A DNA stretch of 30,202 nt from Octopus sinensis (lineage: Eukaryota). The DNA is taken from the NCBI RefSeq assembly GCF_006345805.1, contig NW_021832627.1:1-30202 (forward strand), read 5' to 3'. The notes under the pieces are model-generated. The model was not told where the DNA came from, did no database searches, and saw nothing but the letters and a program-made list of their open reading frames with translations. Every line of letters starts with the position of its first letter. Within the stretch, counting starts at the first letter, position 1. The translations under genes were made by a program, and so were the position numbers. Positions 422-30,202 of this stretch are shown here, piece by piece.

Positions 422-422
<1 letters not shown>

Positions 423-423
423 T

Positions 424-2374: not shown

Positions 2375-2431
<57 letters not shown>

Positions 2432-2684: not shown

Positions 2685-3648
<964 letters not shown>

Positions 3649-5684: not shown

Positions 5685-5718
<34 letters not shown>

Positions 5719-5723
5719 GGCGT

Positions 5724-6712: not shown

Positions 6713-6745
<33 letters not shown>

Positions 6746-6964
6746 GTATATATATATATTAATGATATGGGGGCGTCTATGTGCATCTGTGTGTGTGAGT
6801 ACATGCACAAGTGTTCGGCTTTTAACATACACACACAGACACACACACATGCACATACACACACACGCACACACGATCACACATTATGATATATATATAT
6901 ATAAAAAATATTCATACGCATTCAGAGATCTACACACACATATAAATAGTGTATTCTCTTCTTT

Positions 6965-8029: not shown

Positions 8030-8099
8030 TCGTTTGTATATATATATTATATATAAATATATATATGTATATATATATAAATATATATGTATATATATG

Positions 8100-8130
<31 letters not shown>

Positions 8131-8218
8131 GTATATATATGTATATATATATATATAATATATAATGTATATATATATAAATATATATATGTATATTATA
8201 TATAATAAATATATATAG

Positions 8219-8258
<40 letters not shown>

Positions 8259-8275
8259 TATATGTATATAATATG
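8030..8275. repeat. Long imperfect (TA)n microsatellite
   Basis: Direct inspection. Confidence 0.95.
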
Positions 8276-8474
8276 AATGTATATGTGAGCGTGTGTCTAC
8301 ATGTGTGTTGGAAATCATGCACATGTGTACGAGGCAAAACACTCACACACAGACACACACACACATATATATATATAGGTATATAAGTACATATTTATAT
8401 ATTCATACGCATTTATATATATACACACACGCATGCGCACACACACATATAAAGGTGTATTCTTATTCTTTAAA

Positions 8475-8920
8475 TTCCTTTACGTGTTGAAGTCATTTGC
8501 CCACGGTCATGCTGGAGCACCATATCAAAAGCCTTTAAGCCCAATAAATTGACATCAGAGCTTATTCTTTGTAAGCCAAGTACTTATTTTATTGGCCGCT
8601 TTTGCCGAACCGCAATGTTAAGGAGGGGCCTTAAAAAACGTGCTGTCAAGATATGAATGGGTAACAAACATAGTCGCAAAGACAGAAACACACATACACA
8701 AACAAATAAACTCACACACACACACACAAACACACATATGCTTCAATATATAGATACATATAGAACGCACTTCTTTCGGTTTCCGTCTACCAAATCCACT
8801 CGTAAGGCTTTGGTCAGCCAGAGGCTATAGTAGAAGACACTTTCCCAAATTGCCATGCTGTGAAACTGAACCTGGAACTATCTGCTTGTGAAGCATGTTT
8901 CTTACCACACAGCCACGCCT
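8475..8920 (-). mobile_element. CORE-type SINE (family 'B'), locally duplicated paralogue of 6965-7460
   Basis: Same head, core and tail motifs, and the same flanks (ATGCAT.TGTGTTTATGTAGA.GTCTATA...). Confidence 0.8.
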
Positions 8921-10099
8921 ATGCATATGTGTTTATGTAGAAGTCTATATATAGGATGAACAGGACAAAGAAATGTTTGAATAATAATTCTGAAGTGCAT
9001 GTAACAACGTTATGGTTGCTTGGAACCAAAATCTCACCGACAAATGATCGTCAGGAACAACTTAATTGTATAATTTGCATAGTTATAGAAAGATAGAGAG
9101 AGAGGAAAAAAAATCATATATACATGTGTGTGTAGATACAAATGTTAAATCTTAAAAGAAAAGTAACAAAAATTGATTACCTTTATAGAGCCGGCCCCAA
9201 ATATGACTTCGGTTTGAATTTTTGACAGAAATTAAATGTTTTATCCACTTATCGGAATATTCTATTGCCTCATATAAGTTTTTTGTCTCAACCTTCCAGG
9301 TGCTATCCGAAAAGCATACTGAATGAAATACCCTGTTGTAATAATTCTCTAATTATTTTTAAAACGAGAGTGGCAGTATTTTTTCTTGATGTATGTGATT
9401 GGCTGAAATTCTTTAATATCCGGAAAATAAATCCATTTTCCAGCTAGTCACCATTCCTACACGTCGAGTGTTGAAATGGTCGCTGTGCAACATAAGATGA
9501 ATTGTTCTGCGCACAAAACACCACTCGTCCCAGGATCTGAAATCACGACCTTAATCACGATTTCATGTCCTCGACTTCTATTATATTACCAAAACTTTAT
9601 TTTTCATATGTCCTGACAACACCCACAGAATATTCTTATCTACTTGTCGCTTTTCTAAAACAAACGCCATTGTTTTTACCGATTATTGGGATGGCGATAT
9701 CTGCTCAAAAATATGACCTCATCGCTCTAGTTACTAAAATGGAAACCCGGCCAATTTTCCTCGTTTCGCAGAATATATTTCAGTTATTTGTAAAGAATGC
9801 TTGTTGTTCAATGATGACAAGACTATGATCAGAGGCGTTTCGGCCATGATCATGCCGTTGATTTACTTACATCGCAATGTGTGTTGTGTTCTTTCCGTGG
9901 TTAAGACGGTAGGGTGTGGGACAATGGAATATCATTGTCTCAAATGCTTACGATAGGGCTGATAGCGCAAACGTTCAGGTAATGGACAATCATTAGTCCT
10001 GAAACCTACACCTGCAATCATTATTGTAATACATCACATGATGTGGATGTTAATTTTCATAGATCTCTCCGAAATATAAGTCCGACCTCACAATTAATT

Positions 10100-11880
10100 T
10101 TTGCTTAGAAACTCTGTCTCCCTTTTCAGCTTCCTTTCAGCAACCATAACCATGTCTCACTATTACTATTTCCTGCAACTATCTTTGCCAATCGACATTG
10201 CCATACATTCTCTTGTCAGTTAGATTATCTTCCTACTTTTTTTATTGTTTTAATTTCATTTGGCTTTTTCCTTTCCTATCTCTTACTGTAACTCTTGCAA
10301 CTCATAAATTTTATTCATTATTATATATATCAACTCTAGCTAACTCTACCCTACTTTCTGCTGATATTAAACCGCTTCCACCTTCGTTATTCTAAGTAAG
10401 TGCAATCTTGCTCTTCCTAATCGAGGCTGAAGTCCTCTATTCATATTGAATTCCTTCCTAGTTCTTCTGTCTAGATTTGCTAATTCAGATCTTTTCCAAT
10501 CAACAAATTCTGCTGAATACCGAAGTAACGACACTTCCCAAAGTTTTTACAACCTTTACTAGATTTAGAACCCTTCGCTTTCCCTTCATTAGCTTCTTCA
10601 ACCTTCCGATGTACTCCTTAGCTATTTTTGTTTTCATTTCCATTGTTAGTACACTCTCAGATTCTAATACTCCGAAGCACTTATGATTCTCTGCCTTCAG
10701 TGATATTACTCTCTTGCTATCTGGCCTTCACTCTTGACTCCCTGTCCCCTTTTTATGATTTATGATGCGCACATATCAATGCCAAATTCCATGCCTATAT
10801 CTTTTCTTAAGCGCCTTACAATTCCTATTAAGGAACCAAAAAGCTTCTAATCGTCCATCTTGAGCAAATGATTAATATTTCTTTTAACATCTCTAAACTG
10901 ATACCCTGACTTTGCCTTTCTTAGTACTAAATTGACGACAGCTAATCATAACACAAATATTAATGGAGATAACGGGTCTCCCTGGAGAATTCCTCACCTG
11001 ATATTAACTTTTCCTAAGACAGTGTCACCTGAGTAGAGATATAATTTCCAATTCTTTGCACTATAGCTGTAACTAATTAAGTCTCTTGTGTTGTCTGCAA
11101 CACTGAATATACTCGAATATTCACTTATCCGTGAGTGTTGAATCATGCCATATGATTTTTATACTGTTGAAGTTTGCATTCTTTATTTTAGAACTGCTTT
11201 CTCTGTGTGTAATTGATCGTGCGTTCCTCTAGCCTTCTTTCTGCAAACATTTCAGTTCTTCTGGTAGCAAATTCTGGTTGTCAAGTTACTTCTACATGTT
11301 TTCTGTGTGAATTCATGTTAAAAGTCTCTACATTGGGAATTTGCCTGGTTTTTGTCTATTTTGGATTTTATGTAGTTAGTTATGAATGCCTGATCGTGTG
11401 CGGTTGCTTACAAACACTGTCTCCCTTTTCATTTTCCGTTCTGAAGCCATATTTGTCTGTAAGTGTCCCTTGGCTATTCTTTCTGTACCCTTTCTGTTCC
11501 ACTGGTGCTTTGTAATTTATTTCCAGGAAATCATACACCTAATTAGATATTATTCCTGTCATCAGCTTCCACATGAGGGGCAGACAGGTGATAGGCCGGT
11601 GATTATCCACTGCATTGCTTTGTTGGGATTATTTTGGCAAAGAATTGTTTGACTTTTGGTCAGCCTCTTTGGGATTTGTACCCCGTTGTTGATCATTTTA
11701 TATATTTGCTTGGCTATTCTTCTGTGTAGTGCTGGGGAAATTTTCAGCCAATATCCTTGTACGCTATCCGGTCCTGGGTATTTCCAGTTTGGCGATTTAA
11801 TCACTCTGGCCCACATTGGTAGTCAAATATACAATGAGGCCACAGGTGTTTATACATCTGCTTTTACTCGTCCTTAATTA
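10100..11880 (-). pseudogene. Old, scrambled R4/Dong-type reverse transcriptase remnant
   Basis: Minus-strand motifs with stops and frameshifts: [118 protein letters not shown]. Confidence 0.85.
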
Positions 11881-12253
11881 CTAAACAATACTCTCCTCTC
11901 GCTCTCTTTCTCTCTCTCTCCTCTAATAACTTAATTAAATTTAACTCTCTATAATTATCTACGATGACTATGCGAGAATTTGTATGTGGGTGTGTCTGTG
12001 CGTACAAACAGACATTTATCTGTCCATTTCTAAACTCATACGTATGGATGTGTATGTATGGCCGCGTAAGTGTGTGTATCTGACTGTGTGTATATCAATA
12101 GGAATATGCCACTGCATATGTGTCTGTGTGTGTGTCTGTGTGTGTTTGCATATGTTAGTGCGTGTGTGTATGTGTATGTCTCTCTCTGTATGTATGTGTG
12201 TGTATACATGCATCCCTTTAACCCCCAAGTCAAACACCCCTTCACTATATAGA

Positions 12254-12550
12254 CTAATCTCTATATACTCTCATATATTTCTCATTCGCCCAATAATAGA
12301 CTCTTCCAAGGCCTTCCAAATCTGATTCACTTTCTATTCAAAGATGCAACTGATAACTTCCATTATCCTTTGCCAGGGACTTTCCTGGAAACTTTACTAA
12401 CTCTTCGATCACGAAAATACCAGACACATTTATCTGAGAACTCCATGGTTTCCCAAAAGACTGGTAACGAATAATATCCTCGATTAAGGATATCATGCAT
12501 TTCTGCATTTTCTTTTTTTTGTGCATATTTGTAACCACTCTGCACAGTTC
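12254..12550 (-). pseudogene. Unidentified degraded reading frame (copy A: frameshift and ~90-nt deletion relative to copy B)
   Basis: Paralogue of 21210-21593. No family recognised. Confidence 0.25.
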
Positions 12551-12735
12551 TTTTATTTGTTTCAGCCATTTCACTGCAGCCATGCTGGAGCAATGCCTTT
12601 TTCACCGAACTTATTATTTATAAGACTTGTACTTATTCTATGAGTCTCCTTTGCTGTACCACTAATTTACATGGACGTAAACTCACCAACATCGGTTGTA
12701 AAGCGATGGTGGTGGACAGACACAGACACAAAAAC
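12550..12735 (-). mobile_element. 3' half of CORE-type SINE (family 'B')
   Basis: Reverse complement of the SINE tail ...GCTCCAGCATGGCTGCAGTGAAATGGCTGAAACAAATAAAAGA. The paralogue at 21590-21950 still has the head. Confidence 0.75.
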
Positions 12736-13169
12736 TCACACACCACACACCACACACACACACACACAATACTTATATTATAAATTATAAAATGAATGTT
12801 CTTGAAAAAGGCTAAATGTTTTCTTGCTCCTAATCTGTTATAATTTATGTCCCTCCGCTCAATGATCAACCACACCTTAAACCCATGATACCCAATTTCT
12901 GCACCACATTTTTCTGTTCAAGCCGGTGTTTTAGTGGTAAACCAAACTGAGCAGTCACACTACATACGACCTTTTACATGATTTTCTTTTGTATCAACGC
13001 TAAGGTATAATATATACTTTTATGTGGCTTTGGGGAGTGGCATGAACGGATTTCTTCTATTGTATTATTTGTATTTCATTTCTCGTGTAACGAACAATTC
13101 CTTTAACGAACATGGCTTGGAAAGGATTATGTGGTATATAGAGATGGCACTGGTTTGAGAAGTTTTGAG

Positions 13170-14375: not shown

Positions 14376-14798
14376 TTTGGGACGCCTGGTGAAACGCTTA
14401 GAAGTATTTCGTCTGTCCAAAGGCGGCGAGTTGGCAGAAACGTTAGCACGTCGGGCGAAATGCTTAGCAGTATTTCGTCTAGGGTTACGTTCTGAGTTCA
14501 AATTCCGCCGAGGTCGAGATTGCCTTTCATCTTTCGGGGTCGATTAAATAAGTACCTGTTACGCACTGGGGTCGATATAATCGACTTAATCCGTTTGTCT
14601 GTCTGTCCTTGTTTGTCTTCTCTGTGTATAGCCCCTCGTGGGTAGTTAAAAAATATATATTTCATCTCTCACTACGTTCTGATTTCAAATTCCGCCGAGG
14701 TTGACTTTGTCTTTCATCCTTTCAGGGACGATAAATTAAGTACCAATTACACACTGGGTTCGATGTAATGGACTTGTCCTTGTGCTTCCAAAGACAGG
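14376..14798 (+). mobile_element. Stacked family 'A' SINEs (paralogue of 13-376, with an extra SINE head at 14421-14480)
   Basis: AGGCGGCGAGTTGGCAGAAACGTTAGCACGTCGGGCGAAATGCTTAGCAGTATTTCGTCT...GTTCAAATTCCGCCGAGGTCG. Confidence 0.8.

Positions 14799-14884
<86 letters not shown>
14799..14884. repeat. (AAT)n/(ATT)n inverted microsatellite containing a perfect 62-bp palindrome (14799-14860)
   Basis: (AAT)n switches to (ATT)n at the centre 14829/14830. The arms pair perfectly for 31 nt. Confidence 0.9.
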
Positions 14885-14885
<1 letters not shown>

Positions 14886-15134
14886 TGAGGTTTAGCTGGC
14901 AGTATCGTTAGCACTCCGGGCAAAATGCTTGGTAGTATTTCATCCATCATTAGTTTCTGAGTTCAAATTTCCCCGAGGTCTACTTCGCATTTCATCATTT
15001 CGATGTCTATAAATTAAATACCAGTTAAGTACTAGGGGCTATGTAATCGACTAACTCACCCCCCCAAAATATTTCAGGCCTTGTGCCTATAGTAGGAACG
15101 ACTGTTATTATTGTTGTAGTTGTTGTTATTATTA

Positions 15135-15175
<41 letters not shown>

Positions 15176-15199
15176 TATCATTATTATTATTATTATTAA

Positions 15200-15243
<44 letters not shown>
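14886..15243 (+). mobile_element. Family 'A' SINE with long uninterrupted (ATT)n-rich tail (empty site for the 666-2374 insertion)
   Basis: Matches 424-640. The tail at 15101-15243 joins directly to the flank that follows 2433 in copy A. Confidence 0.85.
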
Positions 15244-15669
15244 GTTTATTTAAATTCTTTCGTCTCACATACTGTGATCTCCTCAGCGACTCTCTGCTAC
15301 ACCTATTTCTTCTTATCCCGCTTATTCCGTATTAAAAATTACATTGAAAGTGTACTTAATTACTGTTTGTCAAGTGGATTGTTTATCAAATAATTTATAC
15401 TCGGAACAATTGTACATATATCCCTGGTTAAAACGGAATTTCCCACTTGGTGTGGCTCCTTGTTTTAGTAATTGTCTGCAAGTGCTATGATACTTGTGAA
15501 GCTTACTTTCAACGACGCAAATGTCTCGTTTTCACAAATATAAGTTGATGGTTGCATGAAAAATTCGGACAAGCTGAAGTAGACAGGGTGGGTAGCGCAG
15601 GTCGGTGGCGGGTGTTGAACCCCTTATTGGTGAGAGGAGGAAAAAAGACGAATGAATATGAATACACGC

Positions 15670-15742
15670 ACATACAAACACACACACACAACGCACACAC
15701 ACACACAAACACATATATATATATATATATATATACATATAT

Positions 15743-15795
<53 letters not shown>

Positions 15796-16031
15796 GTGGA
15801 GAGAGAGAGACTTTTAGTGGGGCAAACAGATCGAACCGTCTCAAGTGTAACTGTCCGAGTTGGTCGTGTCTTGTGGACTTGACTGAGGAAAGAAAGCCAC
15901 GAATGGGCCGTCTATTTTTGCCTGTCCTTCTAATCGTTGTTTCTCCTGTCCGCTTTCTATTGTCTATCTGTCCGAATCATTTATTGGCCACTATTGCGTT
16001 CCTTTACCATTTATATATATATTATATATAT

Positions 16032-16079
<48 letters not shown>

Positions 16080-16085
16080 TATACA
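15670..16085. repeat. Compound (CA)n/(TA)n/(GA)n microsatellite region
   Basis: Direct inspection. Paralogous to 2650-3650. Confidence 0.9.
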
Positions 16086-17873
16086 CAGGTGTGTATGATT
16101 GTGTATAGAAGAATATATTACTGAAAGAAATTCCAACTTTGATTTTTATGATTTATTTACAATCTTATAATAATATATGATAAGATAAGATAACATAATG
16201 AAGCGATAGAATATCAAATATCCACTCTGATTGAACAAGTACTTTCATGCATTCTTCAAGTTGTATAAAAATAGTTATTGTCTGCATCATTCGAAAGAGA
16301 AATGAATTCTGCATAAGGTGTAAAAGATAGAGGTAATTTGTATTGTCTTAGTAACAAAATATTTTGTGAGAAATAGGACTATTATCATCGGTCTTAGATT
16401 TACTTTCGCCTGTGTAGATATGTGTGTGTATAAATATTAATTTTAAATCTTAACAGGAAAGTAGCAAAAATTGATTCACCTCGATAATGCCGGCTCCAAA
16501 TATGACTTCAGTTTTAATTTTTTACACAAATTAGACAAGGTTTATCCACTTATCTGAATATTCTATTACCTCATGACAGTTTATTGTATCATTTTGCGAC
16601 TTGTATCGGATAAGAATACTGACCGAAGTACACATTTGTTATAACCCGTTATGTGTGGGGTTTTTTAACGGCAGTGTCAGTATTTTCTGTCGATGTATGG
16701 GATTCGCTGAACTTTAATATCCGGAATTTCCAGAAATTCACCATTCCTACACGACGCAAAGTAATATGAGATGAGGTGTTTTGCTTAAGAACGCAATACA
16801 AGTCCCTTTACGAGAATTGAAACCGAGATCTCGCTATCGTGAATTCAGCACCATTAGCAGCGTGGACACCAATTATATTATTGAACATGGTACATGACAT
16901 ATGTAGGCGTGACAGCATGCCAGAAATCCTTCTTATTTACTAGGCGTTTTCCTGAAGCAACACCCATTGAATTATCATGGATCCCGAAAAAGATCTGAGC
17001 GTTACTCCTAAGAGATGTCTCTTGTCAGCTAACGATATGGCGTTGTATCATGTAATGATAGAAAGTCTGACGCAGAAAATTGCGTTGTTTGATGTGGTGA
17101 TACAGTCTGAGAACGAGGCCAATTTTAGGTACATATTTTTTTGTTTTTTTGTGTGTTTTACTTAGGGTGTTGTTGTCGACGTTGTTGTTTGCCCTGACTG
17201 ATCGTAATTTTACACAAAGGCATTCCAACTATAACCAACTAATTTTTTTTATTCCAACATTAGCAACCATGTCCTCCATTGTGTAAAATAAAAGCGTGTG
17301 ATTGGAAAGAGATTTCGCAGCTATTTCCAGGTGTTTGATGGAAAACATTATAAACATATCTGCGTCACAAGCCAATGTTTCCTGATTGAGTAAAGCTATG
17401 ATCAGAGGACATCCAGTTGTCATCTTCCCATCCATTTAGTTATATAGCATTGTCTCCGGTCTCTAGGTGAGCAGGGTTTTCCCTGAATTCAATTGCTTAA
17501 GTACACATGCAACCAAAAACCCATAGGACACTTGTGTGTATACCACTAAATACATGCTTCCACCACCTCAGATCTGAATGCTTCGTCACCTTCCCATCCC
17601 CGCAGGACTTTCGAATGAAAAAATAAGTCGTTCGCTTAAAAAATATAGAGATTAAATTAAAAATATAATATTAAACAAGAATATCCAAGCAAAATAGTCG
17701 GCAATGCCTGTACACAATGCCTGTACACAAATTTACAAATTGCTTTTCAGCGTTTCTGTCGGCTATTCGCGTTCTGAGTTCCTTTCCCACCGAAGTCCCC
17801 TTTGCCTTTCATGTGTTTGTAAGTGTACCTGTGCATGTTTGTGCATGTGAATGTGTGCAATTATGTACGTTTG

Positions 17874-17950
<77 letters not shown>

Positions 17951-17959
17951 ATATATATA

Positions 17960-18225
17960 GGCTTTGGAGTGTCTGTGTGGTAAGTAGCTTGTTTACCAAT
18001 CACATGGTTCCTGGTTCAGTCCCACAGCGTTGCACTTTAGGCAAGTGTCTTTTACTATAGCCTCGGGTCGACCAAAGCCCTGTGAGTGGATTTGGTAAAC
18101 AGAAACTGAAAGAAGCCCCTCGTATATATGTATATATATATATATATATATATAAATGTGTGTGTGTGTGTGTATATATGTTTGTATGTGTGATTTTATT
18201 GGTCACTTTTGCCGATCCGCTATGT
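17960..18225 (+). mobile_element. CORE-type SINE (family 'B') with intact head
   Basis: GTGTCTGTGTGGTAAGTAGCTTGTTTACCAATCACATGGTTCCTGGTTCAGTCCCACAGCGTTGCACTTTAGGCAAGTGTCTTTTACTATAGCCTCGGGTCGACC. The TTAGGCAAGTGTCTT segment resembles the CORE-SINE domain. Confidence 0.8.
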
Positions 18226-19319
18226 TATTTTTGCTTGGAACCAAATGCTCACCGAAAAATGATCGTCAGGAACAACGTTATTTTATTAAGTCTCATATTT
18301 ATAGAAAGATAGAGAGAGAGGGAAAAAATAAATCATATATATGTGTGTGTATATATAAATGTAAAATCTTAAAAGAAAAGTAAGAAAATTATTTACCTTT
18401 ATAACGCCGGCTCCAAATATTACTTCAGTTTGGATTTTTAACAGAAATTAAATCAATTTTATCCACTTATCTAAATATTCTATTTTTGTCCAACGTTCCA
18501 GGTGCTATCCGATAAGCATACTGAATGAAATACCCTGTTTGTAATTCTCCTTTCTTTTTTAAACGAGAGTGGCAGTATTTTCCCTTGATGTATGTGATTG
18601 GCTGAAATTCTTTAATATCCGGAAAATAAAACTATTTTCCAGCTACTCACCATTCCTACACGTCAAGTGTTGAAATGGTCGCTGTGTAACATGAGACGAA
18701 GTGTCTTGCGCGCCATACATCTCTCGGTCCTGTATTTGAAATCACGAGCTTGTTATCGTGTGTAGCACCCTTAACTACGGTTTCATGTGTCCTCGACTTC
18801 TATTATATTACCAAAATTTTATTTTTCATATGTCCTGGCAACACCCATTCTTATCTACTTGACGCTTTTCTAAAACAAACGCCATTGTTTTTATCGATTA
18901 TTGGGATGGCCATATCTGCTCAAAGATACGACCTCATCTCTCGAGTTACTAAAATGCAAACCCGACGAATATTCCTCGTTTCCCAGAATATATTTCAGTT
19001 GCTTGTAAAGAATGCTTGTTGTTCACTGATGACAAGAATATGATCATAGGCGTTTCGGTTATGATTATCCCGTCGATTTCCTTATATCGCAAAGTGTGTT
19101 GTGTTCTTTCCGTGGTTAAGACGGTAGGGTGTGAGACAATGGAATATCATTGTCTCACATGCTTACGACAGGGCTGATAGCGCAAATGATCCAGTAATAG
19201 GCATTCATTAGTCCTGAAACCTACATCTACAATAATTATTGTATGACATCAGAGGACGTGGATGTTAATATTCATAGATATCTCCGAAATATAAGTCCGA
19301 CCTCACTATCAAGATGTTG

Positions 19320-20855
19320 CTTAGAAACTCTGTCTCCCTTTTCAGATTCCTTTCAGCAACCATAACCATGTCTCAATATTACTATTTCCTGCAACTATCT
19401 TTGCCAATCGACCATGCAAAACATTCTCATGTCAGTTTCTCCCTTATTTTTCTGGTTTTAATTTCATATGGCTTTTTCCTTTCCTATCTGCTACTATAAC
19501 TCTTGCAAATCATAGATTTTCTTCACTATTATATATATCAACTCTGGCTATCTCTACGCTACCTTCTGGTTATATTAAACCTCTTCCACTTTCGTTATTC
19601 TAAGTAAGTGCAATGTTGCTCTTCCTAATCGAGGCTGAAGTCCTCCATTCATATTGAATTCCTTCCTTGTTCTTCTGTCTAGATTTGGTAATTCAGATTT
19701 TTTCAAATCAACAAATTCTGCTGAAAACCGAAGTAACCATACTTCCCAAAGTTTTTACAACCTTTACTAGATTTAGAACACTTAGCTTTCCCTTCATTAG
19801 CTTCTTCACCCTTCCGATGTACTCCTTATCTATTTTTGTTTTTAGTTCTATTGTTAGTACACTGTCAGATTCTAATACTCCGAAGCACTTATGATTCTCT
19901 TCCTTCAGTGATTTTACTCTCTTGCTATCTGGCCTTCACTGCTGACTACCTGTCCCTTTTTTATGACTGATGTTGCGCACATATCTATGCCAAATTCCAT
20001 GCCTATATCTTTGCTGCAGAGTCTTCTAATTCGTATTAAGGAACCAAAAGGCTTCTAATCGTCCATCTTGAGCAAATGATTAATATTCCCTTTATCATCT
20101 CTAAACTGATACCCTGCTTCTGCCTTTCTTAGTACTAAACTGACGACAGTTAAGCATAACACATATATTAATGGGGATAACGTGTCTCCCTGGAGAATTC
20201 TTCGCCCGATATTAACATTTCCTAAGGCAGTGTCACCTGTTTCCGATTCTTTGCACTATTGCTGTAAAATAATTAAGTCTCTGGTATTGTCTGCAATACT
20301 GAATATACTCAAACATTTACTTATCCGTGAGTGTTGCATCATGTCTATTTTGGCTTTTATCTAGTTAGTTATGAATGCCTGACCGTGTGCAGTTGCTTAC
20401 AAACTGTGTCTCCCGTTTCATTTTCCTTTCTGAAACCATATTAGTCTGTAACTGTCTCTTTCTGTACCCTTTCTGTTCCACTGGCTCTTTGTAATTTATT
20501 TCCTGGAAATTATACACCTAATTAGATTTTATTCCTTTCAACAACTTCCACATGAGGGGCAGACAGGTGATAGGCCGGTGATTATCCACTGCATTGCTTT
20601 GTTGGGATTCTTTTGGCAAAGAATTGTTTTACTTGTGGTCAGCCTCTTTTGGATTTGTACTCCGTTGTTGATAATTTATATATTTGCTTGGCTATTCTTC
20701 TGTGTAGTGATGGGGAAATTTTCAGCCAATATCCTTGTACCCTATCCAGTCCTGGGTATTTCCAGTTTGGCGATTTAATCACTCTGGCCCACATTGGTAG
20801 ACAAATATACAATGAGGTGACTGGCGTTGTTGCATCTGCTTTTTCTCATCCTTAA
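19320..20855 (-). pseudogene. Paralogue of the old R4/Dong RT remnant, with an extra ~200-nt internal deletion
   Basis: Collinear with 10100-11880. The segment equivalent to about 11150-11355 is absent at about 20345. Confidence 0.85.
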
Positions 20856-21209
20856 TTACTAAACAATCCTCTCCTCTCTCTCCTCTACTGACCTAATTTA
20901 ATTTAACTCTCTATACTTATATACGATGACTATGCGAGAAATTGTATGTGGGTGTGTCTGTGCGTGCAAACATACATTTATCTGTCCATCTCTAAACTCA
21001 TACGTATGCATGTGTATGTATGGCCGCGTAATTGTGTGTATCTGACTGCGTGTATATCAATGGGAATATGCCACTGCATGTATGTGTGTGTGCGTCTGTG
21101 TGTGCATATGTTAGTGCGTGTGTATATATGTATGTCTCTATCCGTATGCATGTATGTGTATACATGCATCCCCTTAACCCCCAAGTCAAACACCCCTTCA
21201 CTATATAGA

Positions 21210-21593
21210 CTAATCTCTATATACTCTCATATATTTCTCATTCGCCCAATAATAGACTCTTCCAAGGCCTTCCAAATCTGATTCACCTTCTATTCAAAGA
21301 TGCAACTGTTAACTTCCATTATCCTTTGCCAGGGACTTTCCTGGAAACTTTACTAACTCTTCGATCACGAAAATACCAACACATTTATCTGAGAACTCCA
21401 TGGTTTCCCAAAAGACTGGTAACGAATAATATCCTCGATAAAGGATATTATGCATTTCTGCATTTTCTTCTTCTTTCTCCAATAACGGAATGATTTGCTC
21501 AGATGGAATTCTTTACTCAATAACATGCTTAGCTATTCTAGAAACAGCTATAAGAGACTTTGTGCATATTTGTAACCACTCTGCACAGTTCTT
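21210..21593 (-). pseudogene. Unidentified degraded reading frame of 128 codons with three internal stops
   Basis: KNCAEWLQICTKSLIAVSRIAKHVIE*RIPSEQIIPLLEKEEENAEMHNILYRGYYSLPVFWETMEFSDKCVGIFVIEELVKFPGKSLAKDNGS*QLHL*IEGESDLEGLGRVYYWANEKYMRVYRD*. The second stop is TAT (Tyr) in copy A. No family recognised. Confidence 0.3.
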
Positions 21594-21950
21594 TTATTTG
21601 TTTCAGCCATTTTACTGCGGCCATGCTGTAGCACCACCTTTTTAATCGAACTTATTTGTAAGCCTTGTACTTATTCTATGAGTCTTCTTTGCTGAACCAC
21701 TAAATTACGGGGACGTAAACTCACCAACATCGGTTGTCAAGCGATGGTCGGGGACAAACATAGACACTCAAACTCACACACACATCCACATGATGGGCTT
21801 CTTTCAGTTTCCGTCTTCCAGATCCACTAACAAGGCTTTGGTCGGCCCGAGGTTATAGTAGAACGCATTTACCAAGACGCCACGCAATGGGACTGAACCC
21901 CGAACCATGTGGTTAGTAAGCACTCTACTTACTAAACAGCTACTCATGCA
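21590..21950 (-). mobile_element. CORE-type SINE (family 'B'), near full length
   Basis: Reverse strand has head ...CACATGGTTCGGGTTCAGTCCCATTGCGTGGCGTCTTGGTAAATG...TATAACCTCGGGCCGACCAAAGCCTTG and tail GGTGCTACAGCATGGCCGCAG. Confidence 0.8.
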
Positions 21951-22247
21951 CTCACACTTATATTATAAATTATAAAATGAATGTTCTTGAATAACGCTAA
22001 ATATTTTGCTTGATCATTATCTGTTATAATTTATGTCCCTCCGCTCAATGATAAACCACTTCATATCACCTTTCATACGCAATTTCTCCACCACATTTTT
22101 CTGTTTCAGCCGGTGTTTTAGTTGTAAACCAAACTGAGCAGTCACACTACATACGGCCTTTTACATGATTTTCTTTTGTATCAACGCTAAGGTATAATGT
22201 ATACTTTTATGTGGCTTTGGGGAGGGCATGGAACACATTTCTTCTAT

Positions 22248-22465
22248 TTGTACAGTTAAAAAGTTAAGTTGTACAGTTAAAAAGTATAGAGCTTAAATTA
22301 AAAAGATAATATTAAACAAGAATATCCAAGCAAAATAGTCGGCAATGCCTGTACACAATGCCTGTACACAAATTTACAAATTGCTTTGCAGCGCTTCTGT
22401 CGGCTATTCGCGTGCTAAAATCCAATTAGTTGACTGTCCCCTTCTCCCACAGAAACACAACCCTC
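22248..22465. repeat. Third, partial copy of the duplicated unit (matches 5213-5460 and 17625-17810)
   Basis: TTGTACAGTTAAAAAGTATAGAGCTTAAATT...AATGCCTGTACACAATGCCTGTACAC...GCGCTTCTGTCGG is shared with 5213-5350, including the 13-nt tandem duplication AATGCCTGTACAC. Confidence 0.9.
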
Positions 22466-23122: not shown

Positions 23123-26100
23123 GTGTTGGCGAATGTAGTGTTGGCGAATCTCAGGAAGCATGGACGTTTTGAAGGATGCAGTGCTCCGACAAGTAACAAC
23201 TGATGCCGGCAGTTTGTTCCATGCTTGTATGTGTATGGAGGGGAGAAAATCAAGTGTAGTGTTGGCGAATCTCAGAAAGCATGGAAGTTTTGAAGGATGC
23301 AGTGCTCCGACAACTAACAGCTGATGCCGGCAGTTTGTTCCATGCTTGTATGTGTATGGAGGGGAGAAAATCAAGTGTAGTGTTGGCGAATCTCAGGAAG
23401 CATGGACGTTTTGAAGGATGCAGTGCTCCGACAACTAACAACTGATGCCGGCAGTTTGTTCCATGCATCAGCGTGTGTATGGAGGGGAGAAGATCAGGTG
23501 TAGTGTTGACGAATCTCAGGAAGCATGGAAGTTTTGAAGGATGCAGTGCTCCGACAACTAACAACTGATGCCGGCAGTTTGTTCCGTGCTTGCGTGTGTA
23601 TGGAGGGGAGAAAATCAGGTGTAGTGTTGGCGAATCTCAGGAAGCATGGAAGTTTTGAAGGATGCAGTGCTCCGACAAGTAACAACTGATGCCGGCAGTT
23701 TGTTCCGTGCTTGCGTGTGTATGGAGGGGAGAAAATCAGGTGTAGTGTTGCCGAATCTCAGGAAGCATGGAAGTTTTGAAGGATGCAGTGCTCAGACAAG
23801 TAACAACTGATGCCGGCAGTTTGTTCCATGCTTGCGTGTGTATGGAGGGGAGAAAATCAGGTGTAGTGTTGCCGAATCTCAGGAAGCATGGAAGTTTTGA
23901 AGGATGCAGTGCTCAGACAATTAACAACTGATGCCGGCAGTTTGTTCCATGCTTGCGTGTGTATGGAGGGGAGAAAATCAGGTGTAGTGTTGGCGAATCT
24001 CAGGAAGCATGGAAGTTTTAAAGGATGCAGTGCTCAGACAACCAACAACTGATGCCGGCAGTTTGTTCCATGCTTGCGTGTGTATGGAGGGGAGAAAATC
24101 AGGTGTAGTGTTGCCGAATCTCAGGAAGCATGGAAGTTTTGAAGGATGCAGTGCTCAGACAATTAACAACTGATGCCGGCAGTTTGTTCCATGCTTGCGT
24201 GTGTATGGAGGGGAGAAAATCAAGTGTAGTGTTGGCGAATCTCAGGAAGCATGGAAGTTTTGAAGGATGCAGTGCTCCGACAACTAACAACTGATGCCGG
24301 CAAGTTGCTCCATTCTTGAGTGTGTATGGAGGGGAGAAGATCAGGTGTAGTGTTGGCGAATCTCAGGAAGCATGGAAGTTTTGAAGGATGCAGTGCTCCG
24401 ACAACTAACAACTGATGCCGGCAGGTTGTTCCATGCTTGTGTGTGTATGGAGGGGAGAAAATCAGGTGTAGTGTTGGCGAATCTCAGGAAGCATGGAAGT
24501 TTTGAAGGATGCATTGCTCCGACAAGTAACAACTGATGCCGGCAGTTTGTTCCATGCTTGCGTGTGTATGGAGGGGAGAAAATCAGGTGTAGTGTTGCCG
24601 AATCTCAGGAAGCATGGAAGTTTTGAAGGATGCAGTGCTCAGACAAGTAACAACTGATGCCGGCAGTTTGTTCCATGCTTGCGTGTGTATGGAGGGGAGA
24701 AAATCAGGTGTAGTGTTGCCGAATCTCTGGAAGCATGGAAGTTTTGAAGGATGCAGTGCTCAGACCATTAACAACTGATGCCGGCAGTTTGTTCCATGCT
24801 TGCGTGTGTATGGAGGGGAGAAAATCAGGTGTAGTGTTGGCGAATCTCAGGAAGCATGGAAGTTTTAAAGGATGCAGTGCTCAGACAACCAACAACTGAT
24901 GCCGGCAGTTTGTTCCATGCTTGCGTGTGTATGGAGGGGAGAAAATCAGGTGTAGTGTTGCCGAATCTCAGGAAGCATGGAAATTTTGAAGGATGCAGTG
25001 CTCAGACAACCAACAACTGATGCCGGCAGTTTGTTCCATGCTTGCGTGTGTATGGAGGGGAGAAAATCAGGTGTAGTGTTGCCGAATCTCAGGAGCATGG
25101 AAAGTTTTTGAAGATGCAGTGCTCAGACAACTAACAACTGATGCCGGCAGTTTGTTCCATGCTTGCGTGTGTATGGAGGGGAGAAAATCAGGTGTAGTTT
25201 TGGCGAATCTCAGGAAGCATGGACGTTTGGAAGGATGCAGTGCTCCGACAACTAACAACTGATGCCGGCAGTTTGTTCCATGCTTGCGTGTGTATGGAGG
25301 GGAGAAAATCAGGTGTAGTGTTGCCGAATCTCAGGAAGAATGGAAGTTTTGAAGGATGCAGTGCTCAGACAACTAACAACTGATGCCGGCAGTTTGTTCC
25401 ATGCTTGCGTGTGTATGGAGGGGAGAAAATCAGGTGTAGTGTTGCCGAATTTCAGGAAGCATGGAGGTTTTGAAGGATGCAGTGCTCAGACAACTAACAA
25501 CTGATGCCGGCAGTTTGTTCCATGCTTGCGTGTGTATGGAGGGGAGAAAATCAGGTGTAGTGTTGGCGAATCTCAGGAAGCATGGAAGTTTTGAAGGATG
25601 CAGTGCTCCGACAACTAACAACTGATGCCGGCAGTTTGTTCCATGCATTAGCGTGTGTATGGAGGGGAGAAGATCAGGTGTAGTGTTGACGAATCTCAGG
25701 AAGCATGGAAGTTTTGAAGGATGCAGTGCTCCGACAACTAACAACTGATGCCGGCAGTTTGTTCCGTGCTTGCGTGTGTATGGAGGGGAGAAAATCAGGT
25801 GTAGTGTTGGCGAATCTCAGGAAGCATGGAAGTTTTGAAGGATGCATTGCTCCGACAAGTAACAACTGATGCCGGCAGGTTTGTTCCGTGCTTGCGTGTG
25901 TATGGAGGGGAGAAAATCAGGTGTAGTGTTGCCGAATCTCAGGAAGCATGGAAGTTTTGAAGGATGCAGTGCTCAGACAAGTAACAACTGATGCCGGCAG
26001 TTTGTTCCATGCTTGCGTGTGTATGGAGGGGAGAAAATCAGGTGTAGTGTTGCCGAATCTCTGGAAGCATGGAAGTTTTGAAGGATGCAGTGCTCAGACC

Positions 26101-29100
26101 ATTAACAACTGATGCCGGCAGTTTGTTCCATGCTTGCGTGTGTATGGAGGGGAGAAATCAGGTGTAGTGTTGGCGAATCTCAGGAAGCATGGAAGTTTTA
26201 AAGGATGCAGTGCTCAGACAACCAACAACTGATGCCGGCAGTTTGTTCCATGCTTGCGTGTGTATGGAGGGGAGAAAATCAGGTGTAGTGTTGCCGAATC
26301 TCAGGAAGCATGGAAGTTTTGAAGGATGCAGTGCTCAGACAACCAACAACTGATGCCGGCAGTTTGTTCCATGCTTGCGTGTGTATGGAGGGGAGAAAAT
26401 CAGGTGTAGTGTTGCCGAATCTCAGGAAGCATGGAAGTTTTGAAGATGCAGTGCTCAGACAACTAACAACTGATGCCGGCAGTTTGTTCCATGCTTGCGT
26501 GTGTATGGAGGGGAGAAAATCAGGTGTAGTTTTGGCGAATCTCAGGAAGCATGGACGTTTGGAAGGATGCAGTGCTCCGACAACTAACAACTGATGCCGG
26601 CAGTTTGTTCCATGCTTGCGTGTGTATGGAGGGGAGAAAATCAGGTGTAGTGTTGCCGAATCTCAGGAAGAATGGAAGTTTTGAAGGATGCAGTGCTCAG
26701 ACAACTAACAACTGATGCCGGCAGTTTGTTCCATGCTTGCGTGTGTATGGAGGGGAGAAAATCAGGTGTAGTGTTGCCGAATCTCAGGAAGCATGGAGGT
26801 TTTGAAGGATGCAGTGCTCAGACAACTAACAACTGATGCCGGCAGTTTGTTCCATGCTTGCGTGTGTATGGAGGGGAGAAAATCAGGTGTAGTGTTGCCG
26901 AATCTCAGGAAGCATGGACGTTTTGAAGGATGCAGTGCTCCGACAACTAACAACTGATGCCGGCAGTTTGTTCCATGCTTGCGTGTGTATGGAGGGGAGG
27001 ATATCAGGTGTAGTGTTGGCGAATCTCAGGAAGCATGGACGTTTTGAAGGATGCAGTGCTCCGACAACTAACAACTGATGCCGGCAGTTTGTTCCATGCT
27101 TGCGTGTGTATGGAGGGGAGAAAATCAGGTGTAGTGTTGGCGAATCTCAGGAAGCATGGACGTTTTGAAGGATGCAGTGCTCCGACAACTAACAACTGAT
27201 GCCGGCAGTTTGTTCCATGCTTGCGTGTGTATGGAGGGGAGAAAATCAGGTGTAGTGTTGGCGAATCTCAGGAAGCATGGACGTTTTGAAGGATGCAGTG
27301 CTCCGACAACTAACAACTGATGCCGGCAGTTTGTTCCATGCTTGTGTGTGTATGGAGTGGAGAAAATCAGGTGTAGTGTTGGCGAATCTCAGGAAGCATA
27401 GAAGTTTTGAAGGATGCAGTGCTCCGACAACTAACAACTGATGCCGGCAGTTTGTTCCATGCTTGTGTGTGTATGGAGGGGAAAAAATCAGGTTTAGTGT
27501 TGGCGAATCTCAGAAAGCATGGAGGTTTTGAAAGATGCAGTGCTCAGACAATTAACAACTGATGCTGGCAGGTTGCTCCATGCTTGTGTGTGTATGGAGG
27601 GGAGAAAATCAGGTGTAGTGTTGGCGAATCTCAGGAAGAATGTAAGTTTTGAAGGATGCAGTGCTCAGACGATTAACAACTGATGCCGGCAGTTTGTTCC
27701 ATGCTTGTGTGTGTATGGAGGGGAGAAAAATCAGGTGTAGTGTTGGCGAATCTCAGGAAGCATGGAAGTTTTGAAGGATGCAGTGCTCCGACAACTAACA
27801 ACTGATGCCGGCAGTTTGTACCATGCTTGCGTGTGTATGGAGGGGAGGAAATCAGGTGTAGTGTTGGCGAATCTCAGAAAGCATGGAGGTTTTGAAGGAT
27901 GCAGTGCTCAGACAATTAACAACTGATGCCGGCAGTTTGTTCCATGCTTGCGTGTGTATGGAGGGGAGAAAATCAGGTGTAGTGTTGGCGAATCTCAGGA
28001 AGCATGGAAGTTTTGAAGGATGCAGTGCTCCGACAACTAACAACTGATGCCGGCAGGTTGTTCCATGCTTGAGTGTGTATGGAGGGGAGAAAATCAGGTG
28101 TAGTGTTGGCGAATCTCAGGAAGAATGGAAGTTTTGAAGGATGCAGTGCTCAGACGATTAACAACTGATGCCGGCAGTTTGTTCCATGCTTGCGTGTGTA
28201 TGGAGGGGAGGAAATCAGGTGTAGTGTTGGCGAATCTCAGAAAGCATGGAAGTTTTGAAGGATGCAGTGCTCCGACAACTAACAACTGATGCCGGCAGTT
28301 TGTTCCTTGCTTGTGTGTGTATGGAGGGGAGGAAATCAGGTGTAGTATTAGCGAATCTCAGGAAGCATGGAAGTTTTGAAGGATGCAGTGCTCCGACAAC
28401 TAACAACTGATGCCAGCAGTTTGTTCCATGCTTGTGTGTGTATGGAGGGGAGGAAATCAGGTATAGTGTTGGCGAATCTCAGGAAGCATGGAAGTTTTGA
28501 AGGATGCAGTGCGCAGACAACTAACAACTGATGCCGGCAGTTTGTTCCATGCTTGCGTGTGTATGGAGGGGAGAAAATCAGGTGTAGTGTTGGCGAATCT
28601 CAGAAAGCATGGACATTTTGAAGGATGCAGTGCTCAGACAATTAACAACTGATGCCGGCAGTTTGTTCCATGCTTGTGTGTGTATGGAGGGGAGAAAATC
28701 AGGTGTAGTGTTGGCGAATCTCAGGAAGCATGGAAGTTTTGAAGGATGCAGTGCTCCGACAACTAACAACTGATGCCGGCAGTTTGTTCCATGCTTGTGT
28801 GTGTATGGAGTGGAGAAAATCAGGTGTAGTGTTGGCGAATCTCAGGAAGCATGGAAGTTTTGAAGGATGCAGTGCTCCGACAACTATCAACTGATGCCGG
28901 CAGTTTGTTCCATGCTTGTGTGTGTTTGGAGGGGAACAAATCAGGTTTAGTGTTGGCGAATCTCAGAAAGCATGGAGGTTTTGAAAGATGCAGTGCTCAG
29001 ACAATTAACAACTGATGCTGGCAGGTTGCTCCATGCTTGTGTGTGTATGGAGGGGAGAAAATCAGGTGTAGAGTTGGCGAATCTCAGGAAGAATGGAAGT

Positions 29101-30202
29101 TTTGAAGGATGCAGTGCTCAGACAATTAACAACTGATGCCGGCAGTTTGTTCCATGCTTGCGTGTGTATGGAGGGGAGGAAATCAGGTGTAGTGTTGGCG
29201 AATCTCAGAAAGCATGGAGGTTTTGAAAGATGCAGTGCTCAGACAATTAACAACTGATGCTGGCAGGTTGCTCCATGCTTGTGTGTGTATGGAGGGGAGA
29301 AAATCAGGTGTAGAGTTGGCGAATCTCAGGAAGCATGAAAGTTTTGAAGGATGCAGTGCTCAGACGATTAACAACTGATGCCGGCAGTTTGTTCCATGCT
29401 TGTGTGTGTATGGAGGGGAGAAAAATCAGGTGTAGTGTTGGCGAATCTCAGGAAGCATGGAAGTTTTGAAGGATGCAGTGTTCCGACAATTAACAACTGA
29501 TGCCGGCAGTTTGTTCCATGCTTGTGTGTGTATGGAGGGGAGAAATATCAGGTGTAGTGTTGGCAAATCTCAGGAAGCATGGAAGTTTTGAAGGATGCAG
29601 TGCTCCGACAACTAACAACTGATGCCGGCAGGTTGTTCCATGCTTGAGTGTGTATGGAGGGGAGAAAATCAGGTGTAGTGTTGGCGAATCTCAGGAAGAA
29701 TGGAAGTTTTGAAGGATGCAGTGCTCAGACAATTAACAACTGATGCCGGCAGTTTGTTCCATGCTTGTGTGTGTATGGAGGGGAGAAAATCAGGTGTAGT
29801 GTTGGCGAATCTCAGGAAGCATGGAAGTTTTGAAGGATGCAGTGCTCGACAACTAACAACTGATGCCGGCAGTTTGTTCCATGCTTGTGTGTATGGAGGG
29901 GAGAAGATCAGGTGTTGGCGAATCTCAGAAGCATGGAAGTTTTGAAGGATGCAGTGCTCCGACAACTAACAACTGATGCCGGCAGTTTGTTCCATGCTTG
30001 CGGGTGTATGGAGGGGAGGAAATCAGGTGTAGTGTTGGCGAATCTCAGGAAGCATGGAGTTTTGAAGGATGCAGTGCTCAGACAACTAACAACTGATGCC
30101 GGCAGGTGTTCCATGCTTGTGTGTGTATGGAGGGGAGAAAATCAGGTGTAGTGTTGGCGAATCTCAGGAAGCACGGAAGTTTTGAAGGATGCAGTGTTCG
30201 AC
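23123..30202. repeat. Tandem satellite array, 121-bp monomer, about 58 copies visible (runs off the window), derived from a LINE ORF2 C-terminus/3' UTR on the minus strand
   Basis: Consensus GTGTAGTGTTGGCGAATCTCAGGAAGCATGGAAGTTTTGAAGGATGCAGTGCTCCGACAACTAACAACTGATGCCGGCAGTTTGTTCCATGCTTGCGTGTGTATGGAGGGGAGAAAATCAG (121 nt, 59 G+C). The minus strand translates to AWNKLPASVVSCRSTASFKTSMLPEIRQHYT*. Confidence 0.97.

What the first reader, a model, noticed from the sequence alone, without database searches (positions are those of the whole stretch)
23123..30202. Satellite DNA built from the terminal 121 bp of a LINE ORF2/3' UTR
Seen: about 58 head-to-tail 121-bp monomers. The minus strand of each reads AWNKLPASVVSCRSTASFKTSMLPEIRQHYT-stop, followed by TTTTCTCCCCTCCATACACACGC. 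Known: W-N-x-L-P-x-x-V-V...S...F-K is the characteristic extreme C-terminal motif of ORF2 in CR1/L2/Daphne-group LINEs. Inference: a segment spanning the stop codon was tandemly amplified, with the monomer junction near (GC)AAGCATG joining 3' UTR sequence back to the 'AW' codons. This makes a retrotransposon-derived satellite at ~49% GC in an AT-rich genome. I am not aware of a description of this satellite, but cannot search. It could be a candidate centromeric or subtelomeric repeat, or a source of small RNAs against the parent LINE.
Basis: partly seen in the sequence, partly recalled or inferred. Interest (0 to 1): 0.8.

Follow-up and report, generated by a model that had tools for sequence, protein, structure and literature searches.

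The report
Octopus satellite DNA from a LINE tail
A tandem array of at least 7 kb of 121-bp units in what is almost certainly an octopus genome was copied from the last 31 codons, stop codon and first 25 bases of the 3' UTR of a dispersed CR1-like retrotransposon; it is a clear, apparently undescribed example of a known way that satellite DNA arises.

Summary
Window 23123-30202 is a head-to-tail array of 58.4 copies of a 121-bp unit. It has 47.9% GC against 36.2% in the flank, and it runs off the window end.

The interpretation also holds. An index-free HMMER search with the monomer peptide found C-terminal ORF2 tails of LINEs from Octopus vulgaris and O. sinensis. One O. vulgaris tail is identical to the satellite peptide over all 31 residues, and its DNA is 97.5% identical to the monomer over 119 nt.

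In that LINE, the heptamer AAGCATG occurs twice, exactly 121 bp apart, at the two ends of the amplified segment. The satellite junction keeps one copy.

A second O. vulgaris locus shows a 5'-truncated LINE whose ORF2 runs without a break into 6.9 monomers, which looks like a transitional stage.

Inside the window array, substitutions are neutral with respect to the old reading frame. Multi-monomer blocks are 98.6-99.2% identical against a 94.2% monomer mean, which fits growth by unequal exchange.

Not verified:
- the exact LINE clade
- genome-wide abundance
- any centromeric or small-RNA role

LINE-derived satellites are already known, for example the chicken CR1/HinfI repeat and the cetacean L1 satellite. 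This is a new member of a known kind.

The parts
23123..30202 (-). Array of 58.4 head-to-tail 121-bp monomers in the LINE sense orientation on the minus strand. It is cut by the window end, so the LINE-upstream side of the array is not visible.
   Evidence: TRF; monomer alignment; composition.
27008..27128 (-). Representative 121-bp monomer (R variant).
   Evidence: It is 97.5% identical over 119 nt to the O. vulgaris LINE tail at L001 6693-6811.
27125..27220 (-). ORF2-derived part of one repeat: 31 codons AWNKLPASVVSCRSTASFKTSMLPEIRQHYT plus the TGA stop (96 nt).
   Evidence: Translation. It is identical over 31 of 31 residues to the C-terminus of P0012 (O. vulgaris).
27100..27124 (-). 3' UTR-derived part of one repeat (25 nt): TTTTCTCCCCTCCATACACACGCAA.
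   Evidence: It aligns with the LINE 3' UTR directly after the stop codon in L001 and L003.
27095..27101 (-). Junction heptamer AAGCATG (CATGCTT on the plus strand), where 3' UTR sequence joins back to the A-W codons.
   Evidence: In the parent LINE the heptamer sits at L001 6693-6699 and 6814-6820, 121 bp apart.
23123..23148 (-). Downstream end of the array in LINE orientation. The last unit stops inside the R-Q-H-Y codons with a short duplication (TTCGCCAACAC twice), then meets (TG)n/(TA)n microsatellite. No LINE 3' UTR remainder follows.
   Evidence: Sequence.
23375..23497 (-). Monomer with the minority 123-bp junction (minus strand ACACACGCTGATGCATGG). It keeps the 'TG' that precedes AAGCATG in the LINE. 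Its near-identical twin is at 25555-25677.
   Evidence: The same junction type occurs in the O. vulgaris array in L003.
24466..25554 (-). Nine-monomer block duplicated at 25799-26887 with 99.2% identity (lag of 11 monomers).
27250..27612 (-). Three-monomer block duplicated at 28703-29065 with 98.6% identity (lag of 12 monomers).

Best explanation
This is non-coding satellite DNA in an octopus genome (O. vulgaris or a close relative). It arose from an internal 121-bp segment of a dispersed CR1-like LINE. That segment holds the last 31 codons of ORF2, the stop codon and the first 25 nt of the 3' UTR.

Shown:
- The parent LINE carries the heptamer AAGCATG at both ends of this segment, exactly 121 bp apart, and each satellite junction holds a single copy.
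- A LINE copy exists whose ORF2 continues directly into tandem monomers.
- Substitutions in the window array ignore the old reading frame.
- Multi-monomer blocks have been duplicated recently within the array.

Inferred:
- The first duplication arose by misalignment at the 7-bp direct repeat. This could be replication slippage or unequal exchange on DNA, or a template jump by the reverse transcriptase.
- The array then grew by unequal crossing-over.
- The array has no protein product. If it has any effect, it is as heterochromatin-type repeat DNA.
For: Array anatomy.

Parent LINE: an HMMER search of 1.84 billion proteins with the 40-aa read-through peptide gave LINE ORF2 tails at E 4.6e-10 to 1.6e-4. 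Named relatives come from Octopus sinensis, O. vulgaris and O. bimaculoides. P0027 and P0029 carry PF00078 and overlap the tail-bearing fragments P0011 and P0016.

DNA identity: the monomer matches O. vulgaris L001 6693-6811 at 97.5% over 119 nt, E 1e-54.

Breakpoints: the LINE upstream side reads GTTGCTG|AAGCATG|GAACAAA. The LINE downstream side reads CACACGC|AAGCATG|TATCTGAC. The satellite reads CACACGC|AAGCATG|GAACAAA. For a blunt random junction, the chance of at least 7 nt of microhomology is about 4^-7, or 6e-5.

Direction: the tail motif is conserved in relatives that are 25-33% identical to the satellite peptide over the aligned tail, including Branchiostoma.

Transitional locus: in L003 (O. 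vulgaris) a LINE body runs into 6.9 monomers at 8665-9495.

Neutral evolution: there are 65 unique substitutions, spread 21/22/22 over codon positions. 24.6% are synonymous against 23.0% expected at random. Every monomer has a stop codon, and 121 is not a multiple of 3.

Block duplications are 98.6-99.2% identical against a 94.2% monomer mean.
Against: - Only two LINE copies of the closest subfamily (L001, L003) could be read, so the ancestral sequence at the CA-rich downstream breakpoint is uncertain.
- A minority 123-bp junction that keeps the LINE upstream 'TG' occurs both in the window (2 monomers) and in L003. The history may therefore involve more than one event, or an 11-bp repeat GCTGAAGCATG in the true parent.
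- The upstream end of the window array is outside the window.
- Genome-wide copy number and location are unknown.
- The source species of the window was not identified directly.
Confidence: 0.88

Rival explanations
1. The tandem units are made and spread by retrotransposition itself. While copying LINE RNA, the reverse transcriptase jumps back from the upstream AAGCATG to the downstream one and re-copies the 121-nt segment. LINE copies are then born with a variable-number repeat, and the window array is a greatly expanded descendant of such an insertion.
For: - In L003 the array is continuous with the LINE body on its upstream side.
- The L003 array ends exactly where a different 5'-truncated CR1-like tail with an (AACT)n end begins. 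This looks like a chimeric insertion made by a template switch.
- L001 holds two LINE tails head to tail, and the first lacks its last ~119 bp of UTR. This also suggests template switching.
- CR1 families are among the recently active LINEs in O. vulgaris (PMC13282606).
Against: - No array was seen flanked on both sides by LINE sequence.
- The downstream end of the window array stops inside a monomer next to a microsatellite, with no LINE UTR remainder.
- A possible target-site duplication in L003 (TTACTAC) lies in low-complexity sequence and is not convincing.
- Growth to 58 or more copies with block duplications needs DNA-level exchange anyway.
Confidence: 0.2
2. The array has a cellular role, as a centromeric or subtelomeric satellite or as a small-RNA (piRNA) source that silences the parent LINE.
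For: - The array is long and homogenised, and its GC content differs sharply from its surroundings.
- Its sequence is 97.5% identical to a LINE family that may still be active, so antisense transcripts would match the LINE.
- The flank is repeat-rich and contains a large segmental duplication.
Against: - There is no direct evidence of any kind.
- The monomer's dyad symmetry (AAGCATGGAA/TTCCATGCTT) does not fold better than shuffled sequence, z = -0.24.
- No Rfam family matches.
- The position on the chromosome is unknown.
Confidence: 0.1
3. The array is an assembly artefact: collapsed or over-extended reads from a few LINE tails.
For: The array reaches the end of the window, and tandem repeats are error-prone in assemblies. 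Read support could not be checked.
Against: - There are 65 distinct substitutions, indel variants and structured block duplications.
- An independent tandem array of the same unit exists in the O. vulgaris chromosome-level assembly.
- The junction sequence is satellite-specific and consistent.
Confidence: 0.03
4. It is a protein-coding repeat gene, or the resemblance to a LINE tail is chance.
For: Each unit has an open stretch of 31-40 codons, and ORFs of about 100 aa cross unit borders.
Against: - There is a stop codon in every unit and a frame shift at each unit, since 121 = 3x40+1.
- The substitution pattern is neutral.
- There is no Pfam match.
- The DNA identity of 97.5% to a dispersed LINE has E 1e-54.
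Confidence: 0.01

Closest known systems
Chicken HinfI tandem repeat containing a CR1 segment (Li and Leung 2006, as summarised in review PMC9659126)
   Same: It is a tandem repeat whose unit contains the 3' UTR and a partial ORF2 coding region of a CR1-family LINE.
   Different: The CR1 piece is embedded in a larger unit. Here the whole 121-bp unit is LINE sequence, with both breakpoints and their microhomology identified. The host is a cephalopod, not a bird.
Common cetacean satellite derived from the L1 3' end; PROsat (Phodopus) and Pvc20 (harbour seal) derived from L1 ORF2 (review PMC9659126)
   Same: These are satellites whose monomers are homologous to the 3' terminal part or the ORF2 of a LINE.
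   Different: The parent is mammalian L1, not a CR1-like element. Similarity there is partial (for example 88% to a small region). Here identity is 97.5% over essentially the whole monomer, and a LINE-to-array transitional copy is seen.
Drosophila 18HT satellite derived from the HeT-A/TART non-LTR retrotransposons (review PMC9659126)
   Same: [quoted passage not shown]
   Different: 18HT is centromeric on the Y chromosome, and its parents are telomere-specialised elements. No chromosomal location is known here.
Variable-number tandem repeats inside retrotransposons (for example 3' UTR tandem repeats of Ogre elements, mentioned in PMC9659126)
   Same: In L003 the repeats sit inside or at the end of a retroelement copy.
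   Different: The window array is at least 7 kb and its visible end is not bounded by LINE sequence.

Membership tests
Transposable-element-derived satellite DNA (LINE-derived) | Many head-to-tail copies of one unit | tested here: met
   58.4 copies with period 121.
Transposable-element-derived satellite DNA (LINE-derived) | The unit is homologous to a segment of a dispersed transposable element | tested here: met
   97.5% over 119 nt to the LINE tail in O. vulgaris L001. LINE tails were also found in L002-L005 and L007.
Transposable-element-derived satellite DNA (LINE-derived) | Direction is from element to satellite (the segment is ancestral in the element) | tested here: met
   The tail motif is conserved in distant LINE ORF2 tails, including Branchiostoma. 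The satellite keeps the stop codon and UTR in LINE order.
Transposable-element-derived satellite DNA (LINE-derived) | High genomic abundance or long arrays at one or more loci | tested here: inconclusive
   One array of at least 7.1 kb (the window) and one of 0.83 kb (L003). Genome-wide copy number cannot be measured with these tools.
CR1-group LINE (parent element) | ORF2 with a reverse transcriptase domain | tested here: met
   P0027 and P0029 (O. bimaculoides, PF00078) overlap P0011 and P0016, which carry the tail. No single full-length copy was read.
CR1-group LINE (parent element) | Conserved C-terminal tail ...VRPHLEY..VQRR.T...RGH.FK...FF..RV...WN.LP..VV...S...FK..L | tested here: met
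   Alignment A1. That this tail is typical of the CR1 group is from memory, not from a tool.
CR1-group LINE (parent element) | RT phylogeny places the element inside the CR1 clade | not testable with these tools
   No reference LINE library (Repbase, Dfam, RTclass1) is available. Database names such as 'jockey-like' and 'Tick transposon' are automatic.
CR1-group LINE (parent element) | 3' end made of short microsatellite-like repeats | tested here: not met
   The LINE ends near ...CAATAATTTCATTATATT in L001 and L002, with no clear repeat. Only two ends were seen. A different CR1-like tail in L003 does end in (AACT)n.
CR1-group LINE (parent element) | Apurinic-type endonuclease domain at the N-terminus of ORF2 | not tested
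   Only 5'-truncated copies were recovered.
Centromeric satellite | Association with the centromeric histone or a cytological centromere position | not testable with these tools
   Needs FISH or CENP-A profiling.
Protein-coding tandem-repeat gene | A continuous reading frame under purifying selection | tested here: not met
   There is a stop codon in each unit, the unit length is not a multiple of 3, and 24.6% of substitutions are synonymous against 23.0% expected at random.

The most novel reading that the evidence does not exclude
The 121-bp repeat is generated in one step by the LINE's own reverse transcriptase jumping between the two AAGCATG sites during insertion. LINE copies would then seed ready-made mini-arrays across the octopus genome, and some of these grow into satellites, possibly including centromere-associated ones. 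The LINE-to-array copy in L003, its chimeric 3' end, and the head-to-tail LINE tails in L001 would be footprints of this process.
Probability: 0.2. Interest if true: 0.6.

Novelty: new member of a known kind. Interest (0 to 1): 0.4.

Why it matters
Satellite DNA in cephalopods is almost undescribed. Searches of the held literature found no octopus satellite paper. A detailed 2026 repeat annotation of O. vulgaris (PMC13282606) lists CR1 among the recently active LINEs but never uses the word 'satellite'.

This locus shows three stages of a satellite's birth together:
- the parent LINE with its two 7-bp direct repeats;
- a LINE copy carrying about 7 units;
- an array of 58 or more units.

It could therefore be useful as a worked example of microhomology-mediated satellite origin, and the unit could be tried as a probe for octopus cytogenetics. 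It does not change the general picture, because LINE-derived satellites are already known in birds, mammals and flies.

Tried and rejected
1. Whole-monomer coding (my own idea). The frame stays open across the unit border as DFLPSIHTQ-AWNKLP, and this seemed to resemble the FFPRTI..WN.LP tails of some LINEs. It was rejected: the DFLPSIH part does not align with ORF2, and it is homologous to the LINE 3' UTR.

2. Word-indexed protein search with a 47-aa peptide. This was a false negative of the index, because the index-free search then found near-identical tails.

3. Hairpin or cruciform from the 10-bp inverted repeat AAGCATGGAA/TTCCATGCTT. The DNA fold energy is no better than for shuffles, z = -0.24. 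The two motifs are on opposite strands, so they are not the direct-repeat microhomology. The second direct copy lies in the LINE UTR, outside the satellite.

4. Search for the parent LINE or degenerate monomers in the rest of the window. None was found.

5. Rfam search of the window and three octopus loci: no family. tRNA scan: none.

6. Exact scan of JGI metagenome contigs for the junction sequence: none.

7. Exact look-ups of window ORFs, to find the source contig and the far end of the array: not on record.

8. P0005/L008, a 64-bp satellite that matched the peptide weakly. It has no significant DNA similarity to the monomer, E 0.54, so I treat it as unrelated.

9. Target-site duplication around the chimeric insertion in L003. 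The only candidate is a 7-nt match in low-complexity sequence, so it was not used as evidence.
Full report
**Observation**

Tandem Repeats Finder reports a single large array at 23134-30196, with period 121, 58.4 copies, 95% matches and no indels. A partial unit begins at 23123. The array runs to the last base of the window, so 7.1 kb is a minimum. GC is 0.479 in the array against 0.362 in the left 23 kb, with a strong GC skew. An anchored split gives 58 units, most of exactly 121 bp, and mean pairwise identity is 94.2%. On the minus strand a consensus-like unit reads AWNKLPASVVSC(R/L)STASFKTSMLPEIRQHYT, then TGA, then TTTTCTCCCCTCCATACACACGCAA. The rest of the window holds no copy of the unit and no WNxLP motif.

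**Finding the parent element**

A word-indexed protein search with the peptide found nothing. This turned out to be a false negative. An index-free HMMER search of 1.84 billion representative proteins used the 40-aa read-through peptide (window 27007-27126, minus strand). It gave eight hits at E<=1e-3.

Five of these (P0001-P0004 and P0007) are short proteins containing ...FRKHFFTLRVAEAWNKLPASVV.C..T.SFK.SMLP.IRQHYT. Upstream of that motif the longer ones (P0001, P0003, P0007) also carry parts of a VRPHLEF..VQRRATR..RGH.YKVRK block. From memory, this is the typical C-terminal region of CR1-like LINE ORF2.

A search with P0003 returned relatives named from Octopus sinensis (P0011) and O. vulgaris (P0012, P0016, P0007). 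A search with P0011 returned O. bimaculoides proteins P0027 and P0029. These carry the reverse-transcriptase domain PF00078 and overlap the tail-bearing fragments.

The last 31 residues of P0012 are identical to the R-variant satellite peptide. In the protein alignment, W, N, L and V of the motif are invariant, and P, F and K nearly so, from octopus tails to Branchiostoma tails. The coding sequence is therefore ancestral in the LINE, and the satellite is the derivative.

**DNA-level proof and breakpoints**

Locus L001 (O. vulgaris OX597841.1) holds a 5'-truncated LINE tail. Its positions 6693-6811 are 97.5% identical to the monomer over 119 nt, E 1e-54.

In this LINE, AAGCATG occurs at 6693-6699, overlapping the E-A-W codons. 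It occurs again at 6814-6820 in the 3' UTR, exactly 121 bp downstream. The alignment shows:

| Sequence | Left flank | Shared heptamer | Right flank |
|---|---|---|---|
| LINE, upstream border | GTTGCTG | AAGCATG | GAACAAA |
| LINE, downstream border | CACACGC | AAGCATG | TATCTGAC |
| Satellite junction | CACACGC | AAGCATG | GAACAAA |

The unit is therefore the LINE segment between two 7-nt direct repeats, with one repeat retained at each junction. For a random blunt junction, the chance of at least 7 nt of microhomology is about 6e-5.

The LINE 3' UTR continues about 119 bp beyond the second heptamer. The amplified piece is thus the end of ORF2, not the end of the element. An older LINE copy from O. 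sinensis (L002, 80% identical) has AACATG and ACATG at these places. The perfect heptamer pair therefore belongs to the young O. vulgaris-type subfamily.

**A transitional copy**

Locus L003 is an O. vulgaris scaffold in the same assembly. It holds a 5'-truncated LINE copy, 95% identical to the L001 copy. Its ORF2 tail continues without interruption into 6.9 tandem units at 8665-9495.

Its first two junctions read ACACGC-TG-AAGCATGG. They have a period of 123 and keep the 'TG' that precedes the heptamer in the LINE. Later junctions have the 121 type. The window array also contains two units with the 123-type junction, at 23375-23497 and 25555-25677. There are two possible reasons:
- The true parent UTR carried a longer repeat, GCTGAAGCATG.
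- More than one duplication or conversion event occurred.

With only two close LINE copies I cannot decide between these.

The L003 array ends exactly where a different 5'-truncated CR1-like tail with an (AACT)n end begins. L001 holds two LINE tails head to tail, and the first lacks its last ~119 bp. Both arrangements suggest template switching by the reverse transcriptase, but neither proves it.

**How the array evolves**

The 65 distinct substitutions are spread 21/22/22 over the three positions of the old codons. 24.6% are synonymous against 23.0% expected for random changes. Every unit has the stop codon, and the unit length shifts the frame. There is no coding constraint.

Multi-unit blocks are near-identical:
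- 24466-25554 against 25799-26887, 99.2%
- 23375-23618 against 25555-25798, 99.2%
- 27250-27612 against 28703-29065, 98.6%

The monomer mean is 94.2%, and identity peaks at lags of 11 and 18 units. This is the pattern left by unequal exchange within an array. It also argues against a simple assembly collapse.

**What was not supported or not testable**

- The 10-bp inverted repeat inside the unit does not give an unusually stable fold, z = -0.24.
- There is no Rfam family and no tRNA.
- The clade of the parent LINE was not established, because no reference LINE library is at hand. The two LINE 3' ends that I could read show no microsatellite tail.
- Abundance, chromosomal position, transcription and small RNAs cannot be addressed here.
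- The source species was not identified directly. The 96-98% identity to O. vulgaris units, together with shared old dispersed repeats, points to Octopus, probably the vulgaris/sinensis group.

**Comparison with what is known**

A review of satellites derived from transposable elements (PMC9659126) lists the following:
- the chicken HinfI repeat, which contains CR1 3' UTR and partial ORF2
- the common cetacean satellite, from the L1 3' end
- PROsat and Pvc20, from L1 ORF2
- Drosophila 18HT, from HeT-A/TART

The present case is of the same kind.

What seems new is the host and the completeness of the record. No octopus satellite paper was found. The 2026 O. vulgaris repeat annotation does not mention satellites, although it lists 13 recently active CR1 families. 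Here both breakpoints, their microhomology and a LINE-to-array intermediate are all visible.

**Verdict**

This is a new member of a known kind. Interest is moderate at 0.4.

The most novel reading still open is that the reverse transcriptase itself makes and spreads the mini-arrays. I put this at about 0.2.

Noticed in passing
window 928-2347 (minus strand): A fragment of a different LINE, split over three overlapping ORFs. The middle ORF matches zf-RVT (PF13966, E 5.5e-6, just under the curated cut-off). It is not related to the satellite's parent.
   Followed up: partly
window 7-13061 and 14442-22248: The left flank consists of two collinear copies of a large segment, 82-91% identical, with big indels. 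Matching blocks start at 7/14442, 3575/16008, 9009/18224, 11353/20342 and 12771/21956. The satellite starts about 900 bp after the second copy ends.
   Followed up: partly
window 82-178, 266-362, 502-598, 14688-14784, 14966-15062: Five copies of a SINE-like unit of about 97 nt (…TTTCATCCTTTCGGGGTCGATAAATTAAGTACCAGTT…), next to (ATT)n runs (family D14). ARAGORN finds no tRNA in them.
   Followed up: no
window 5203-5367, 17618-17782, 22259-22423: Three copies (93-94%) of a 165-nt element that contains CAATGCCTGTACA 2.2 times.
   Followed up: no
window 11562-11816 (minus strand) and its copy near 20600-20860: An ORF that looks like a decayed N-terminal part of a reverse transcriptase (…KSPNWKYPGPDSVQGYWLK…). 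The 9-12.5 kb / 18-21.5 kb repeat blocks may therefore be LINE fragments. This was judged by eye only.
   Followed up: no
L003 9500-9890: A second, different CR1-like LINE tail (…RVADPWNKLPDEMV…FKVSLDQKW…stop, then an (AACT)n-like end) starts exactly where the 121-bp array stops. This may be a chimeric insertion. A candidate target-site duplication, TTACTAC, is weak.
   Followed up: partly
L001 6140-6436 and 6437-6939: Two 5'-truncated tails of the parent LINE lie head to tail (offset 385 bp, 92.8% identical). The first stops 15 nt after the UTR heptamer and has a 6- to 8-bp deletion in the S-M-L codons. The surrounding genes are C2H2 zinc-finger arrays with 84-bp periodicity.
   Followed up: partly
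L006 591-1373 (Logan SRR26065847, organism unknown): Another tandem repeat, with units of about 127-141 bp, about 6 copies and 73-76% matches. Its translation repeats …VVSRWNKLPADEVSAKLTDSFF… (P0008, E 6.7e-4 to the satellite peptide). It may be an independent LINE-tail-derived repeat in another organism. It has no DNA similarity to the octopus unit.
   Followed up: partly
P0006 (ENA, 820-bp contig, organism unknown): A LINE-type tail in which the 15-residue piece HTQDWNLLPETVVNV is repeated three times in frame before …ATSVNSFRNHLDIF. This is another small tandem duplication centred on the same WN.LP motif.
   Followed up: no
L001 8851-9357; L003 10284-10891: Other tandem repeats in the O. 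vulgaris loci: a 167-bp unit in 3.0 copies at 100% identity, and a 265-bp unit in 2.3 copies.
   Followed up: no
tool behaviour: The word-indexed search reported that no candidate shared three 5-residue words with the 47-aa query. However, P0007 and P0012, which are in that collection, share 21-31 consecutive residues with it. Negative results from that index for short queries should not be trusted.
   Followed up: yes
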